DNA from: Dimorphilus gyrociliatus
Lineage: Eukaryota; Animalia; Annelida
DNA: 64,000 bases
Assembly (NCBI GenBank): GCA_904063045.1
Contig: CAJFCJ010000019.1
Coordinates: 2,247,700-2,311,699, forward strand
Direction of reading: 5' to 3'
In this document: positions 1 to 5,906 of the stretch, piece by piece
Numbering within the stretch: the first letter of the stretch is position 1
How the letters are laid out: each line of letters opens with the position of its first letter
The notes under the pieces: generated by a model
The model's database searches: none
What the model was told of the DNA's origin: nothing
What the model saw: the letters and a program-made list of their open reading frames with translations, nothing else
Made by a program: the position numbers and the translations under genes

Positions 1-3000
1 CAATAACGGACAGATCTCAACCAGATGGTGGATCTTTGGAAAATTGTGCTGTTATAGAATTAAGAAACCTTTATTCGACTAATCAATGGCACGATGTACC
101 CTGTTCAGTGAGCAACGTTAAACAATTCATCTGCAAATTGGATGATTATTCATTAAGGAGAGAAAAATTGGATTTAAATTTAAACTCCTCTCTAGTCAAT
201 GATTCTTCGTTGTTTAAATGTAATAATTCAGAGTTTATTCATATTTGGGCCGTCTGTAACGGTAAAAATGATTGTGTTGATGGATCCGACGAAATAGGTT
301 GTACTTTAGAATGTCCCTCATCATTTTATAGTTGCGGAAATGGTGAATGCATTCCATTCTCTTATCAATGCGACCAGAAAGAGGATTGTTCAAATGGTAA
401 AGATGAAAGCAATTGCGGTACGTATTATTTGCAAGCGATTCTTTTTCTATTATATAATTTCATTATGAAATCTATCAAATAGTTCTCAAGACGTGTGATC
501 AGGACGAATTTATGTGTGTTAATGGACAATGTATTAAGAACACGGACAGATGCGATAGAATTGAACATTGTATGGACGGTTCAGATGAAAGTGAATGCGA
601 TTTTTGTATGCAACCAGACATGTTTCAATGTTTTGATGGCGCTTGTCTTCCTTGGAAAACTCGTTGTGACAAGACACACGATTGTGCCGGATGTTCTTAC
701 GAAGATGAAATTGGCTGCTATGGAACAGCAATTTCCCTTTGTTCAAGTAAACATCTTTGTTAAGTAAATATATGCTATAAATAAATTCATATTAATGTAT
801 ACGTAGATTTAGGAAATGCCGTTGGAGAAGGTTATCCGAGTGTTACCTGCTATATAAATCAAACAATAGATGTTGGCCGTATAGATATAGATAAAGCAAT
901 TAAAATAAGCCAGGATGATAATGATACAAATTCAATTCACGTGGACGTCTACTATCCAGCTTTCCCAAATAACGAACTATTAGTTGCCGCAATGCAAAAA
1001 TCTAAATCCTGTACTCAAACAGTAACAATAAAACCTTGCGGTAGTGTGGTATGGTCTTCGAGTTATTACTATAGCGTAAACAACATAAAAATATATCTAG
1101 AGTCTTTCATCAACAAGCATTTTGACGGGTACAGTATATATAATTTCATTTCAATTTCTACTTAATTACTATAGCAAAAAACAACTAGAAATGGTAATTG
1201 CGAAGAAACATTTCAAGTGTCTAATAGGCTATTTATACCAATTTTATATATATATCTAAAGACAACAAACGTGAGGTATAATTCCCTTGAAATAGGAAAA
1301 TTAATGTGCTTAGTCGGTAAGTAAATTGTAATGAATTATTGCTGTTCATCATAGAAAAATTCTTATAATACCAACCAGATCTGGGACATGAAGAATCTGA
1401 GAAATTCATTTGTAATAATTTACAGAAAGTTGATAAAAGACAACGTTGTTTATTCGAATATGATGAGTATAACATTCAAATTGGCTGTAGAGATATGTCT
1501 CATTTAATTGATTGCGGTAAAGGTGTAATTAAATAGATCTGTAAATTCTATTGTTTTTCTTTTTAAAAAATACTATTTAGACAATGTTAAACCGCAAAAT
1601 ACCGAATGCGGTAAAGATGTTGTTGCTGAAGAATATCGGGGAACGTTAAATAGGACTAATACAGGTAAATACTGTCAGAGATGGGATATTGATTATCCTC
1701 ACGCTCAAGACGTTAACGAACCATCGATGGTTAGAGAGGCAACTGTCTCGGACGCTCATAACTTTTGTAGAAACGTTTGGAGGTTAAAGTCTCCCTGGTG
1801 CCATTCCCTTAGCCCTGATCATAGAAGAGAATTTTGCGATGTTCCCGTTTGCAGTAAAATTCATATAGCTTTAAATATAGTACATATGTATTAATTCACG
1901 TGTTTAAACATCCTATAGAGGAAGATAAGTCAATTACGCCTATGACTTGTCCAAAAGACTATGTACGATGTCCCAACTTCTATTGTATTCCTCTAAGATA
2001 TGTTTGCGACGGTGTTTGGCATTGTTCAAACGGTGAAGATGAGCAAAATTGCGGTAAAAATTGAAATATTGATTTCATAAACGTACCTTTCAATTTTCCT
2101 TTTTATTAATTTATTTCTGTTAGATAACTACTCTTGTCCTGGATTTTATAGATGTAAATCTAGCCGTAATTGCATTCCTCCTTATCAATTATGTAATGGT
2201 AAATTTGAATGCCCAGAAAAAGATGATGAAGAATTTTGTCAGACAAAATGTCCTGCTCATTGTAAATGTATTGGATTATCTTGGTTTTGTAACATTCCAG
2301 TTGATTTAAATGGAATTAAAGAAGCAAGAGAGTTCATTAGACAATTAGAATTACCATTTGTTGATATGAATACTACACAGAAAGATTTCTATACTTTTCC
2401 ATTTCTTACTAAGTTAAATTTATCTCATTCAAATATTCATTTTCTGGAAGAATATTCTTTCACAAAAACTCCAAATTTATTCTCATTGGACCTAAGTTGG
2501 AATAGTATTGAACGCTTAAGTTCCAATACTTTCCGTGGTTTGGGAAGACTACAAGAATTAGTCCTAACTGGTAATCGTAACTTGAGAATTATAGACCCCT
2601 ACTCTTTCAACGGTCTAAATAGTTTGCCTAATTTATATTTATCTGGTTTAAATATTGAAAAATTGCCAGATAATTCCTTTCAAGGACTGAACTCGTTAAA
2701 AGTTCTTGATTTGGCAAATAATCGGTTGGAATCAATTTTTGATAATTCCTTCTTTGGTTTGTCAAATTTACAAGAATTGGATTTAAGTGATAATGATATC
2801 GGAGCTGCTAATAGTAAAACTTTCGCTCCATTAAGTCAATTGATAAAGTTAACGAGCGATGAATTCCGCTTTTGTTGTTTATCCCCTCAAGTTGATAAAT
2901 CCAATTGTAAACCAGCCGCAGATGCTATATCCAGTTGTAATGATTTGATGAGAGAAAATTATCTAAGAGCATTTTTATGGATTTTCGGCTTATCGGCTTG

Positions 3001-4335
3001 TCTAGGTAACGCCTTTGTATTTATCTGGCGATTTAAAGATATGATGAAAACACCAAATTCAATGATAATTACAAATTTAGCTATTTTCGACTTTTTAATG
3101 GGAATATACATGCTGATAATAGCATCTGTTGATATCTATCTTAAAGGAAAGTATATTGAATACGATAGTATATGGAGGAATCATTGGTTATGTAAAACTT
3201 CTGGATTCTTAGCAACACTCTCTAGTGAGGGTTCCGTTTGTACTCTGGCTCTTATGACGCTCGATAGAGTTATCAATATAGTAAACCCTCTAAGTACAAA
3301 AAAATTAACAACTAAAAGTACAATTGTAACACTATTTGGTGTTTGGCTATTTGTTTTTATTATTAGTATCCTACCACTCTTTCCGATTGACTATTTCGGG
3401 TCTAATTTCTATGGCAGATCCGGTGTATGTGTTTCACTACCATTGACAGCAGACAGACCAGCTGGATGGCAATATTCTGCAGCAATATTTCTCGGTTTCA
3501 ATTTTGTTTGTTTTGTGATCATTGCAGCTGGATACTTCTATATGTATAGAATAATTAATTCATCCAGCTCCAGTTTAGGAAGTTCTCAAAGAAGGAATCA
3601 AATTGCTGTAGCAAGAAAGATCATGTTAATCATTCTTACTGATTTTGTTTGTTGGTTACCTATAATCATAATTGGTTTCGTTGCCGTAACTGGAACGGAG
3701 ATATCGGGTGATGTTTACGCTTTTGTGATCGTATTCGTTCTACCTATAAACAGCGCCCTTAATCCTTTATTATATACAATAAGCTCGATTAGGGCGCCAA
3801 AGAAGAAGATGCGAAAAACCAAAAACTCAACTGGACCAAATTCTGTAACAGTAAAACTATTATTATTATACTCAAAATGTTTTAATTTCAATAATATCTA
3901 CATTACATTAGAGAATTACTACTTACGACAATGAAAAACACAAAACATCGATGATTGTCTTCTACGGAGGTGACGGCAAACAATTAACTTTGAAACAAGT
4001 TGCCAGCTTACGTCAAACAAAAGTTGCGGGTCTATTAATAATAGCAATTAAACTGTTTAAGATAATTAATGGTCTACATAACATAGGCTTAGTGCACGGG
4101 AATTTTAAAATGAGTAATACAGCGATAAGAAAGAATAAGGTAGGTCATAAAGTAATAAATTCAAATATTATTCCCCTTTATATAATAAATTAATATGAAC
4201 GTTTAGAAAATTTATCAAGTTGGTATTCTTGGCTTGGAAAACGCCCAACATATACAAAATGAATTTGATACATCAGAAGATATATATGGTTTAAGTATTG
4301 CACTCCGATCAGCTTTGCAAACGTTTAATAAATAA
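1..4335 (+). CDS. GRL101-like / type C LGR (LDLa-LRR-7TM) with C-type lectin, Caspr-like, kringle modules and kinase-like tail; 5' end outside window
   Basis: Spliced exons <1-417, 483-746, 807-1128, 1189-1316, 1379-1516, 1581-1853, 1919-2053, 2124-3850, 3912-4139, 4207-4335, all GT-AG and phase compatible. CTL end (QPD..ENCAV..WHDVPC..FICK), multiple LDLa (CxxxxxCDxxxDCxDGSDE), kringle (YRG..CQRW..NFCRN..PWC..EFCDVPVC), LRRs, hinge ISSCNDLM, 7TM with NPLLY. Confidence 0.9.
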
Positions 4336-4709
4336 TTTTACTTGTTAAGACAATGTTGTGTATTTATTCACAAAAAGGTTAGTTTTGTAGATAGGCAAAC
4401 GAATGTCCTAACTAATTTCTATTAATAAATCAAATAATCTACTATAACATGGTACGTCCTTATTAAAATTATTGTTTTTTTCTATTCTTTTTTTGCTTAA
4501 TCACTATTATGATCAATATTTACATTTCTTAATGTATATCTTTTTTGGATAAGTTGTTAAAAAAAAACTATCAAGGGGTGGATGAGTGGGTGGGAGGAAT
4601 GAAACATCTTTCAATAATACAAAATAAAGAAGAGTTTTGTTGAGTAGTACTCAAAAAATCTAATGTAAAGTAGTTGAATATTGGGGTATGTTGCTGGACA
4701 AGTGAAAGG

Positions 4710-5906
4710 ATGAGATTGATAATTCAGGATATACTCATAATTCTGCTGGTTATTGTTTGTACTATAACTGTACTGTTAGATTTTACTGAGAAGCCTGATG
4801 CGTCTTCTGTAGTATTTCGAGTATCGTCAGATAATAAAATAGCCAATTCGGATGACTTTGAATTAGATTCAGAGGTTTCGTACAATGTTAAAACTGGTCC
4901 TCTAATGGATGTTGACGAAGAAGTAGATGAGATGATAGTTGGCGGAGATGAAATTGTATACGAGCCAATAAATCGAATAACAACAAAACTATTGCAATGT
5001 GAAGGACCAGGGGGATTAGGTAATAAAATAAGATCAATATCTTCTTGTTATATGCTCGCCGAAATTCTCGACAGGCAACTAGTAGTCATTGATAATTGGC
5101 CAACAAGATGCCCAATGTCCAATCACTTTGAACCATCCCATTTACACCTTCAAAGGGATAGATTTTGCAACAAATATAATTCATATGTATTAAAAGTACC
5201 ATTTAATTATCATAAAATTATTAATAGCCAATCAATAATGGAATTAAGAAAAAGAAATGAATCTTGTATCCTAATAAAATCAAGTACATCGTTTATGTAT
5301 CAAAATTTTGATGAGCCTGTTGTACAACTACTAAAAGAGAAGAATTTAACATCGAAGAGTTTACGTTCAACATTCAGAAATGTATTTAAAAAGCTTTTTA
5401 AGCCGAAAATAAATTTACAACAGATTGTTGACAACAACTTGAATCAAATGAGAGATGTTGATGCCGAAGATGATCCTAAAAAGTTAATATGCTTTGAAGT
5501 TAAATCTGGATGGGATGAGGCGGGTGTTGGTAAATGGACTGAAAACTGTTATCAAAATTTGATACAAACTATTAACGAAAATATAAGAAATTTTACAGAT
5601 AGTAAAGTCTTCTTGAGTACAGATAGCAATTTAATGGGATCTCTTATTAAATTGACCTTTGGTGATAATATTCACGTTGCTGAGGAAAAATTAATGGAAT
5701 TTTCAACGGATAAACTAACAGGTACACCTTGCACACTTTATAATAAAATCTACACCGATTTCCTTATTTTAACATTATGCGATAAATCATATACAAGTCA
5801 TTTTTCATCATTTGGCTTGTTATCTGCACGTCTTAATCAATTGTTAACAATGAATGTTATGAAATGTGAAGAAAATCGATTCTCAATTATAGAAAAAGAT
5901 TTTTAA
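4710..5906 (+). CDS. Type II membrane fucosyltransferase-like glycosyltransferase (alpha-1,2/1,6 FucT superfamily)
   Basis: Single long exon; N-terminal TM (ILIILLVIVCTITVLL); GGLGNKIR motif, VFLSTDS, and DFLILTLCD..S.FSSFG..SA. May have an upstream ATG exon (ATG 4449-4451, intron 4452-4673) in frame with 4674. Confidence 0.7.
   Translation: MRLIIQDILIILLVIVCTITVLLDFTEKPDASSVVFRVSSDNKIANSDDFELDSEVSYNVKTGPLMDVDEEVDEMIVGGDEIVYEPINRITTKLLQCEGPGGLGNKIRSISSCYMLAEILDRQLVVIDNWPTRCPMSNHFEPSHLHLQRDRFCNKYNSYVLKVPFNYHKIINSQSIMELRKRNESCILIKSSTSFMYQNFDEPVVQLLKEKNLTSKSLRSTFRNVFKKLFKPKINLQQIVDNNLNQMRDVDAEDDPKKLICFEVKSGWDEAGVGKWTENCYQNLIQTINENIRNFTDSKVFLSTDSNLMGSLIKLTFGDNIHVAEEKLMEFSTDKLTGTPCTLYNKIYTDFLILTLCDKSYTSHFSSFGLLSARLNQLLTMNVMKCEENRFSIIEKDF

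What the first reader, a model, noticed from the sequence alone, without database searches (positions are those of the whole stretch)
3851..4335. GPCR with a spliced pseudokinase C-lobe fused to its cytoplasmic tail
Seen: after TM7 (NPLLY), two more in-frame exons (3912-4139, 4207-4335) give MIVFYGGDGKQLTL..IAIKLFKIINGLHNIGLVHGNFKMSNTAI..VGILGLENA..SEDIYGLSIAL. By eye this follows protein-kinase subdomain order: hinge; alphaE LHxxG; catalytic loop HRDLKxxN changed to HGNFKMSN; DFG changed to GLE; short activation segment; subdomain IX D-x-Y/W-x-L. The N-lobe and catalytic Asp are missing. Inference: a dead kinase half-domain acting as a scaffold on a rhodopsin-class LGR, an architecture I do not recognise from characterised LGRs.
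Basis: partly seen in the sequence, partly recalled or inferred. Interest (0 to 1): 0.75.

Follow-up and report, generated by a model that had tools for sequence, protein, structure and literature searches.

The report
Hormone-type receptor with dead half-kinase tail
Two small conserved exons give this LDLa/LRR-type G-protein-coupled receptor of a tiny marine worm a cytoplasmic tail that is a catalytically dead, truncated remnant of a protein kinase; related receptors of molluscs and echinoderms carry the same tail, and I found no paper that describes it.

Summary
Observation confirmed. After TM7 (NPLLY), the big receptor exon (2123-3850) can splice through two GT..AG introns of 61 and 67 nt into exons 3912-4139 and 4207-4335 (stop TAA), both in phase 0.

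A relative with a 92% identical receptor keeps both exons in frame, with the same splice sites and stop. Substitutions fall mainly at third codon positions, while the introns and the unspliced read-through are not conserved.

RefSeq models of Pecten, Haliotis and Amphiura GRL101-like receptors carry the same tail, encoded by the same two-exon layout.

A profile of the first tail exon hits only protein kinases in the PDB, always over alphaD-alphaE-catalytic loop. The best hits are HGN-type pseudokinases (5uv4, E 1.6e-5; JAK/TYK2 JH2). A paralogue in the same genome encodes the whole tail in one ORF and passes Pfam's Pkinase cut-off.

The N-lobe, the HRD Asp (HGN), the DFG Asp (ILG), the activation loop and everything after alphaF are missing.

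The window's exon alone is not significant, AlphaFold gave no confident tail model, and I had no RNA data.

This scan already found the same tail on paralogues elsewhere in this genome. The scaffold function is inferred, not shown.

The parts
1..2053 (+). Upstream ectodomain exons of the same receptor gene (context only; the gene starts before the window)
   Evidence: Pfam on stop-free pieces: Ldl_recept_a in 36-419 (8.5e-19), 512-760 (2.9e-10) and 1900-2061 (3.3e-10); partial Kringle in 1727-1891 (4.8e-7). Exon borders were not worked out here.
2123..3850 (+). Large exon: last LDLa, LRR array, rhodopsin-class 7TM (NPLLY), then a 25-residue basic linker ending ..NSVT
   Evidence: Pfam LRR_8 1e-35, 7tm_1 4.6e-29, Ldl_recept_a 0.0012. 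The nearest named homologues are 'GRL101-like' receptors.
3851..3911 (+). Intron 1 of the tail (61 nt, GT..AG, phase 0)
   Evidence: Sequence. The donor CA|GTAAA is kept in the relative, whose intron is 85 nt and 56% identical. Median intron length in D. gyrociliatus is 66 bp (PMC7854359).
3912..4139 (+). Tail exon A, 76 codons: beta5/hinge-like MIVFYGG, alphaD, alphaE (..IAIKLFKIINGLH), pseudo-catalytic loop HGNFKMSN at 4095-4118
   Evidence: Translation. Conserved in L006, P0121, L011, Pecten, Haliotis and Amphiura. Its profile hits kinases only. An HMM built from non-annelid homologues picks this piece as the only further hit among the window's six-frame pieces (E 0.003; next best 0.89).
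4140..4206 (+). Intron 2 of the tail (67 nt, GT..AG, phase 0)
   Evidence: Sequence. The intron sits at the same place in the protein in Pecten, Haliotis and Amphiura and is lost in paralogue L031.
4207..4335 (+). Tail exon B, 42 codons plus TAA (4333-4335): beta-strand KIYQV, ILG in place of DFG (4225-4233), a 15-residue stump of the activation segment, and the subdomain IX/alphaF motif DIYGLSIAL (4279-4305)
   Evidence: Translation. 86% identical in the relative, with the stop at the same place. The DIYxLG motif is shared with L011, Pecten, Haliotis and sea urchin and aligns with residues 118-134 of the paralogue's tail. The exon-B profile alone finds nothing in the PDB.
4325..4330 (+). AATAAA hexamer overlapping the last codons; possible poly(A) signal
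   Evidence: Read from the sequence. It lies within conserved coding sequence, so its role is not shown.

Best explanation
The gene encodes a type-C (GRL101-like) leucine-rich-repeat GPCR. Its ectodomain carries LDLa, kringle and LRR modules.

The mature message most likely joins the 7TM exon to two short terminal exons. These add about 118 residues, starting about 25 residues after NPLLY. The tail is an old, catalytically dead fragment of a protein-kinase domain, running from beta5/hinge through alphaD, alphaE, the catalytic loop and beta7-beta8 to alphaF.

It has no N-lobe, so no glycine loop, no VAIK Lys and no alphaC Glu. HRD has become HGN and DFG has become ILG. The activation loop/APE is deleted, and the protein stops just after alphaF. 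It can therefore hardly bind ATP or phosphorylate anything.

Shown here: the exons are real coding sequence under purifying selection; the same two-exon tail sits on related receptors of molluscs and echinoderms; and the family of tails is homologous to protein kinases.

Inferred: the tail works as a protein-protein interaction surface on the receptor's cytoplasmic face, as KIND domains and JH2/KSR-type pseudokinases do. It might recruit a partner (possibly a true kinase), pair two receptor tails, or fold back on the receptor. It lies where other GPCRs carry GRK/arrestin phosphosites.
For: Splice geometry and frame.

Conservation in a syntenic relative: same donor, acceptors and stop; a coding indel that is a multiple of three (231 against 228 nt in exon A); pN well below pS; most changes at third positions; diverged introns; an unrelated read-through peptide. 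A third taxon, P0121, keeps the exon and the downstream neighbour gene.

The same tail lies downstream of TM7 in L011/L012. It is also inside annotated Haliotis, Pecten, Ruditapes, Amphiura and Strongylocentrotus proteins. The exon layout is the same, at 77-80 aa plus a terminal exon.

Kinase homology:
- The exon-A profile against the PDB gives kinases only. 5uv4 scores E 1.6e-5 in a single stretch, and JAK1/TYK2 JH2, which also carry LVHGN, score about 3e-6.
- Pfam PF07714 reaches 3.9e-5 for one member.
- The only non-self hit among 1.8 billion representatives is the same region of a shrimp kinase.
- The profile also picks up genuine kinases in the worm's own genome.
- Paralogue L031's single-ORF tail scores Pkinase 1.2e-7 at 31.9 bits (cut-off 31.7) and PF07714 1.9e-7, and hits 1289 PDB kinase chains.
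- hhalign of the exon-A profile against that tail gives probability 88% and E 2.9e-6, and the exon-B alphaF motif aligns further on, collinearly.

Predicted secondary structure of the Pecten tail follows the kinase order: two helices, a beta hairpin, then a helix.

D. gyrociliatus has no operons or trans-splicing, which argues against a separate cistron 17 nt after the read-through stop (PMC7854359).
Against: I had no RNA or cDNA for this gene, so the two junctions are inferred. Searches found no transcript-derived protein.

The window's exon A alone is not significant: Pfam Kinase-like 0.083 and no PDB hit by phmmer at E<=10.

Exon B alone finds nothing.

The shrimp hit's E-value sums four near-identical repeats.

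AlphaFold gave the tail low confidence: pLDDT 38-56 in the full Pecten model and 61 for exon A alone. Foldseek found nothing. It is therefore open whether such a fragment folds on its own.

The mollusc and echinoderm models are automatic predictions whose RNA support I did not check. The function is pure inference.
Confidence: 0.8

Rival explanations
1. The two exons are not part of the receptor message. The receptor ends at the unspliced stop at 3934, and 3951-4335 is a separate small gene or conserved non-coding or UTR sequence.
For: There is an in-frame ATG at 3951, and the relative's exon starts with ATG. Automatic gene callers list the piece as its own 80-86 aa ORF. No RNA evidence was obtained.
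Against: The exon A frame opens exactly at the acceptor AG. The donor at 3851 and phase 0 are conserved, while the read-through peptide is not. Annotated mollusc and echinoderm proteins join the homologous exons to the 7TM. The codon-position bias of the changes rules out non-coding sequence. A promoter would have to fit within about 17 nt in a genome without operons.
Confidence: 0.05
2. The tail is real, but its likeness to kinases is convergent or due to chance. On this view it is a lineage-specific helical tail domain unrelated to kinases.
For: The window's exon alone gives no significant kinase hit. Exon B gives none. There is no confident kinase-like 3-D model.
Against: All 60 best profile hits are kinases, at the homologous segment. 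The paralogue's tail passes Pfam's curated Pkinase and PK_Tyr_Ser-Thr cut-offs over profile positions 59-153 and aligns with the window's profiles in the same order. Motif order and spacing match: hinge, alphaE ..LH, H-x-[DN]-x-K-x-x-N, 13 residues to x-x-G, then D-[IL]-x-x-L-G.
Confidence: 0.07
3. [quoted passage not shown]
For: The idea is the same: an N-lobe-less, non-catalytic kinase remnant used for protein binding (PMC2064798, PMC3934834).
Against: No Pfam KIND match at E<=10 for any tail, while the Pkinase and PK_Tyr_Ser-Thr models do match. The tail ends at alphaF and lacks alphaG-alphaI, whereas KIND spans the whole C-lobe (my own knowledge of the family).
Confidence: 0.04
4. The tail keeps some nucleotide-binding or catalytic activity, making this a true GPCR-kinase like those of choanoflagellates, sponges and oomycetes.
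For: The catalytic-loop Lys and Asn are kept (HGNFKMSN). One paralogue keeps HRE.
Against: Only about 25 basic residues lie between NPLLY and the tail, and the introns of 61 and 67 nt leave no room for more exons. So there is no N-lobe, glycine loop, VAIK Lys or alphaC Glu. The HRD Asp and the DFG Asp are replaced.
Confidence: 0.02

Closest known systems
[quoted passage not shown]
   Same: A kinase-derived module without an N-lobe or catalytic residues, used as a protein-binding surface. v-KIND binds MAP2 and Spir KIND binds formin 2 (PMC2064798, PMC3934834).
   Different: There is no sequence match to Pfam KIND here. The tail is about half as long, ends at alphaF and has the activation loop deleted. 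It sits on the C-tail of a GPCR, not in a cytosolic scaffold protein.
HGN-type pseudokinase domains: JAK/TYK2 JH2 and the plant LRR-receptor pseudokinase 5uv4
   Same: These are the best profile hits. They share alphaE ..L(H/E)..(G)LVHGN(I/V) with the HRD Asp replaced by Asn.
   Different: Those are complete bilobal domains, and some still bind ATP (my own knowledge). Here only the beta5-to-alphaF segment is present.
GPCR-kinase fusions (GPCR-TK, GPCR-TKL/K) of choanoflagellates, sponges, oomycetes and amoebozoans
   Same: A 7TM receptor with a kinase-family module at its cytoplasmic C-terminus (bioRxiv 10.1101/2025.04.15.649019).
   Different: Those carry complete, presumably active kinase domains on unrelated 7TM families. 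The preprint reports them in sponges but in no other metazoan lineage. Here a bilaterian rhodopsin-class LGR carries a dead half-domain.
GRL101 / type-C LGRs (Lymnaea GRL101, arthropod LGR5, relaxin-receptor relatives)
   Same: LDLa + LRR + rhodopsin 7TM architecture. The nearest named homologues are 'GRL101-like'. The family is orphan; Veenstra proposes an insulin/IGF-like ligand (PMC8286064).
   Different: The published descriptions I could read deal with the ectodomain and 7TM, not the tail. Many family members in my hit list have other tails, or their models are truncated.
Kinase-homology domain of receptor guanylyl cyclases
   Same: A dead kinase-like module built into a membrane receptor's cytoplasmic part as a regulatory or scaffolding element (my own knowledge).
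   Different: It is a full-length pseudokinase that binds ATP and gates a cyclase domain, on a single-pass receptor.

Membership tests
Type-C LGR / GRL101-like GPCR | Rhodopsin-class 7TM domain | tested here: met
   Pfam 7tm_1 4.6e-29 over residues 301-551 of exon 2123-3850.
Type-C LGR / GRL101-like GPCR | Leucine-rich-repeat ectodomain next to the 7TM | tested here: met
   LRR_8 1e-35, four stretches.
Type-C LGR / GRL101-like GPCR | LDL-receptor class A repeats in the ectodomain | tested here: met
   Ldl_recept_a in four separate pieces.
Type-C LGR / GRL101-like GPCR | Closest named relatives are GRL101 or relaxin-receptor type | tested here: met
   Top named hits are GRL101-like proteins of Haliotis, Anneissia, Ruditapes and Pecten at 41-46% identity. 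The crude tree groups it with annelid genomic homologues.
Protein kinase superfamily (Pkinase / PK_Tyr_Ser-Thr) | Significant sequence-profile match to the kinase domain | tested here: inconclusive
   Window exon alone: Kinase-like 0.083 and no PDB hit. The family profile is significant (5uv4 1.6e-5). Paralogue L031 passes the Pfam cut-offs and aligns with the window's profile (E 2.9e-6). So the feature is met for the tail family and reaches this copy by transitive homology.
Protein kinase superfamily (Pkinase / PK_Tyr_Ser-Thr) | N-lobe with glycine loop, VAIK lysine and alphaC glutamate | tested here: not met
   Only 25 basic residues lie between NPLLY and exon A. The paralogue's Pfam match starts at profile position 59 of 263.
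Protein kinase superfamily (Pkinase / PK_Tyr_Ser-Thr) | Catalytic Asp of HRD and metal-binding Asp of DFG | tested here: not met
   HGN at 4095-4103 and ILG at 4225-4233. The positions were fixed from the alignments.
Protein kinase superfamily (Pkinase / PK_Tyr_Ser-Thr) | Kinase C-lobe three-dimensional fold | tested here: inconclusive
AlphaFold: exon A alone pLDDT 61 with helices at 27-31 and 36-57. The Pecten tail has pLDDT 38-56, with secondary structure in the kinase order. Foldseek gave no hit.
KIND domain | Match to the KIND family profile | tested here: not met
   No KIND hit at E<=10 in Pfam scans of exon A, its seven homologues and the paralogue's whole tail. HMMER filters can drop very weak matches.
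KIND domain | Complete C-lobe (alphaD to alphaI) without an N-lobe | tested here: not met
   The protein ends 12 residues after the alphaF motif. The missing N-lobe is the shared feature.
GPCR-TK / GPCR-TKL/K fusion receptors | 7TM followed by a complete kinase domain detectable by Pfam | tested here: not met
   Only a partial, degenerate segment is present. The family definition is taken from bioRxiv 10.1101/2025.04.15.649019.

The most novel reading that the evidence does not exclude
The tail may be the relic of an ancestral bilaterian receptor that combined an LGR-type hormone-binding GPCR with an active TK/TKL-type kinase. If so, GRL101-like receptors would be a molecular link between the GPCR arm and the receptor-kinase arm of insulin/relaxin-like peptide signalling. 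The surviving half-domain might still dock a kinase-pathway partner, so the receptor would signal through more than G proteins.
Probability: 0.1. Interest if true: 0.85.

Novelty: new variant of a known kind. Interest (0 to 1): 0.62.

Why it matters
GRL101-type LGRs are a widespread invertebrate receptor family. They are still orphan and have been proposed to bind insulin/IGF-like peptides (PMC8286064).

A conserved, kinase-derived tail has not been noted in the papers I could search. A 2025 survey reports GPCR-kinase fusions from protists and sponges but from no other metazoan lineage (10.1101/2025.04.15.649019).

If the tail is a docking module, it gives a concrete handle for finding what these receptors signal through. 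It also adds a new, very short member to the small set of N-lobe-less kinase remnants such as KIND.

For annotation, it shows that short terminal exons of compact-genome GPCRs can carry real domains that ORF-based gene calls treat as separate small ORFs.

Tried and rejected
1. Own-genome tblastn with each tail exon gave only weak kinase hits and no close paralogue. The paralogous tails appeared only with profiles.
2. The search of 1.8 billion representatives with exon A gave only a relative's ORF and a shrimp multi-kinase protein whose E-value is inflated by four repeats.
3. The word-indexed search with exon A found only P0121 and no transcript-derived fragment.
4. BLASTP of exon A against the candidate ORF in L008 gave no alignment. 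That ORF fits the family alignment only by motif (H-x-x-G-x-x-HG), so I treat it as uncertain.
5. The exon-B profile against the PDB found nothing.
6. phmmer of exon A alone against the PDB found nothing.
7. AlphaFold of exon A alone followed by Foldseek was uninformative.
8. AlphaFold of the full Pecten protein gave a low-confidence tail, so I ran no fold search on it.
9. ESM Atlas look-alikes of the Pecten tail were kinase fragments at 0.86-0.89, which counts as a lead only.
10. The FastTree of 121 homologues showed tail-bearing proteins scattered among phylum-level groups. Many rows are truncated ORF calls, so I infer neither gains nor losses from it.
11. The organisms behind assemblies GCA_022702875.1 and GCA_022702835.1 could not be identified from papers.
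12. In one search my slicing of tails failed because gapped alignment rows overwrote the proteins. The HMM therefore covered most of the length of the aligned non-annelid proteins. The result, with exon A as the only further significant piece of the window, still holds as a test.

I used the exons one by one, annotated proteins from other species, and the paralogue's single-ORF tail instead.

Full report
**What is in the sequence**

The window is AT-rich eukaryotic DNA with very short introns. The assembly size of 77.9 Mb and the intron lengths fit that species (published genome 73.8 Mb, median intron 66 bp; PMC7854359), but I did not verify the name myself.

From before position 1 to 4335 runs one plus-strand gene for an LGR-type receptor. 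LDLa repeats and a kringle lie upstream. One large exon, 2123-3850, carries a last LDLa, the LRR array and a rhodopsin-class 7TM (LRR_8 1e-35, 7tm_1 4.6e-29).

The receptor frame completes a codon at 3850. A GT follows at 3851 and an AG ends at 3911. The next frame opens exactly there, because the in-frame TAG at 3909-3911 is also the acceptor. That frame runs 76 codons to 4139. A second GT..AG intron (4140-4206) leads to 42 more codons and TAA at 4333-4335.

Both junctions are phase 0, and the introns are 61 and 67 nt.

**Are the exons real?**

A Logan contig of a close relative (L006; receptor 92% identical; same neighbouring genes) has the same arrangement:
- The donor CA|GTAAA is kept.
- Exon A is 231 nt, one codon longer than the window's and in frame.
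- Exon B is 129 nt, with the stop at the same place.
- Its introns are 85 and 62 nt and only 56-58% identical to the window's.
- Sequence after the stop is about 63% identical, close to the intron values.
- The unspliced read-through peptides of the two species are unrelated.

Synonymous sites are saturated (pS 0.75 and 0.59) while pN is 0.185 and 0.072. Third positions carry 39 of 69 and 17 of 23 differences.

A third taxon (P0121, 70% identical) keeps exon A and the downstream neighbour gene. This is coding sequence under purifying selection.

**Does it belong to the receptor?**

I could not obtain RNA. The evidence is therefore comparative.

In a more distant genomic homologue, two exons lie downstream of the TM7 exon (L011/L012; 7TM about 55% identical over the 57% of the query region that its truncated ORF covers). 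Both have good acceptors and phase 0. They encode ..GLQDMGLVHGHITSRNIYL.. and ..DIYGLGIIARDLL...

Annotated proteins from NCBI carry the same tail after NPxxY:
- Haliotis P0003 and P0005: ..LLHSNGLVNG.. and ..DIRDFGHLVSKML..
- Pecten P0033: ..YLHKQELVHGNISAESIEI.. and ..DIYDLGMVVKVLL..
- Ruditapes P0014
- The brittle star Amphiura P0009: ..YLHTSGLSHGKV..
- The sea urchin P0023: ..HACAMAHGSID.. and ..DLDQLGAVIAEL..
- More weakly, a spider fragment, P0008.

Mapping three of these proteins onto their genomes shows the same layout. There is one exon of 77-80 codons, then an intron at the same place about ten residues after the pseudo-catalytic loop, then a terminal exon.

An HMM built only from non-annelid homologues picks 3912-4190 as the only significant further piece among the 1842 six-frame pieces of the window (E 0.003; next best 0.89).

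D. gyrociliatus has no operons or trans-splicing (PMC7854359). That makes a separate cistron starting 17 nt after the read-through stop unlikely.

**Is it kinase-derived?**

The window's exon A alone gives only a hint: Pfam Kinase-like at 0.083, nothing by phmmer against the PDB, and weak tblastn hits on catalytic loops of the worm's own kinases.

Scored against 1.8 billion representatives, the only non-self hit is the alphaD-alphaE-catalytic-loop segment of a shrimp protein with four kinase domains. Its E-value of 9.5e-7 is summed over four near-identical repeats, so I do not rely on it.

Profiles settle the matter:
- A 7-sequence profile of exon A (A2) finds 252 PDB sequences at E<=10. The best 60 are all protein kinases, aligned over the same segment.
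- The best single-stretch hit is the plant LRR-receptor pseudokinase 5uv4 (27.4 bits, E 1.6e-5; ..LHN..HGNIKSSN).
- It is followed or flanked by JAK1 and TYK2, whose JH2 domains read DLVHGNV, and by BUBR1, VRK3, KSR1, STK40 and VPS15. Most of these are known pseudokinases.
- One member alone reaches PF07714 at 3.9e-5.
- The same profile finds genuine kinases in the worm's genome.

Most tellingly, a paralogue on another contig of this genome (L031, 7TM 46% identical) encodes the whole tail in one open frame, with intron 2 lost. That 136-residue piece scores Pkinase 1.2e-7 at 31.9 bits, above the curated cut-off of 31.7. It scores PK_Tyr_Ser-Thr 1.9e-7 over profile positions 59-153 of 263, and it matches 1289 PDB kinase sequences.

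hhalign of the window's exon-A profile against it gives probability 88% and E 2.9e-6 (residues 39-93). The exon-B alphaF motif aligns further on (residues 118-134), so the two are collinear.

**Anatomy of the remnant**

By those alignments the tail reads as follows:
- MIVFYGG: beta5/hinge.
- ..LTLKQV..: alphaD.
- ..LLIIAIKLFKIINGLH: alphaE.
- HGNFKMSN in place of HRDLKxxN. His, Lys and Asn are kept; Arg is Gly and Asp is Asn.
- Thirteen residues further, ILG stands in place of DFG. The spacing is the same as LLG in the paralogue and one residue more than in RSK2.
- Only 15 residues follow before DIYGLSIAL, the subdomain IX/alphaF motif with its invariant Asp. About 18 residues are therefore missing, namely the activation loop, P+1 loop and APE.
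- The protein ends 12 residues later. AlphaG-alphaI are absent.

Upstream there are only 25 basic residues after NPLLY, and the introns are too short to hide exons. There is no N-lobe.

The piece is thus less than a C-lobe: it is the beta5-to-alphaF core. The 'DFG' position varies across species (D in Pecten, A in Haliotis, G or I in annelids), as expected for a dead domain.

**Structure**

AlphaFold on exon A alone (8-row alignment) gave pLDDT 61, with helices at 27-31 and 36-57. Foldseek found nothing.

AlphaFold on the full Pecten protein gave an excellent LRR+7TM model but a tail at pLDDT 38-56. Its elements were H445-449, H455-477, E491-495, E498-503 and H519-533. That is the kinase order alphaD, alphaE, beta7, beta8, alphaF, but at low confidence.

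The fold is therefore consistent with a kinase core but not demonstrated. Whether the fragment is stable on its own, or needs a partner, a second tail or the receptor core, remains open.

**How it most likely works**

Catalysis and ATP binding can be excluded with good confidence from the missing N-lobe and the replaced Asp residues.

The tail persists across molluscs, annelids and echinoderms. It shows strong constraint, exon B especially (pN 0.07). The conserved positions cluster on alphaE, the HG loop and alphaF. All this argues for a structural or binding role.

By analogy with KIND domains (v-KIND binds MAP2, Spir binds formin 2) and with JH2/KSR-type pseudokinases, I propose a docking surface on the receptor's cytoplasmic face. 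This step is inference only.

**Comparison with the literature**

No paper in the library pairs GRL101 with a pseudokinase. Veenstra's treatment of GRL101 discusses the ectodomain and 7TM only.

A 2025 preprint on holozoan GPCRs states that GPCR-kinase fusions occur in oomycetes, amoebozoans, choanoflagellates and sponges but in no other metazoan lineage. It adds that none has been characterised.

The tail is present but unannotated in public RefSeq models.

Earlier follow-ups of this scan (s1-080382, s1-080282) reported the same dead half-kinase tail on paralogous receptors elsewhere in this genome. My profile scan of paralogue loci agrees: L031 is clear, and L037, L041, L040 and L035 give weak collinear hits.

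**Verdict**

This is a new variant of known kinds (pseudokinase or KIND-like modules, and GPCR-kinase fusions). The splice junctions, the fold and the function still need experiment.

Noticed in passing
window 4674-5906 (+): The next gene is a single 398-410 aa ORF with an N-terminal hydrophobic stretch and only a weak Pfam hit to xyloglucan fucosyltransferase (E 0.004). It keeps its place right after the receptor in both relatives (408 aa in L006, 397 aa on the ERR14224705 contig).
   Followed up: partly
window 806-1165 (+), ORF 941-1165: A receptor ectodomain exon between the LDLa pairs and the kringle has no Pfam match.
   Followed up: no
L031 (G000:C33:88414-92259), ORF 2477-2887: This paralogous LGR has its whole kinase-like tail in one ORF (intron 2 lost). 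It keeps HRE instead of HGN and is the least degenerate copy seen. It passes the Pfam Pkinase cut-off.
   Followed up: yes
G000:C7:471837-472676 and 480566-481408 (L033, L032); G000:C34 (L035-L037): The genome holds clusters of neighbouring LGR paralogues. The C34 copies and L040/L041 show weak collinear tail-profile hits downstream of TM7. The two C7 copies show none within the 1.5-kb flanks fetched.
   Followed up: partly
L011 4160-5000: In the distant homologue, the intron between the two tail exons is about 1 kb long and filled with a degenerate short tandem repeat that reads as YSYIMH-type ORFs in several frames.
   Followed up: no
P0122 (XP_068229785.1, Palaemon carinicauda): This 2846-aa shrimp protein is named 'serine-rich adhesin for platelets-like', but it consists of four near-identical units of coiled coil, Ser-rich repeat and a complete protein kinase domain. 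The name looks wrong.
   Followed up: partly
L008 12480-12720 and 2434-3489, 13371-13583: The contig of the 53% identical homologue carries a long (ATT)n/(ATC)n microsatellite and retroelement remains (Exo_endo_phos, RVT_1) around the receptor. That genome is much less compact than the window's.
   Followed up: no
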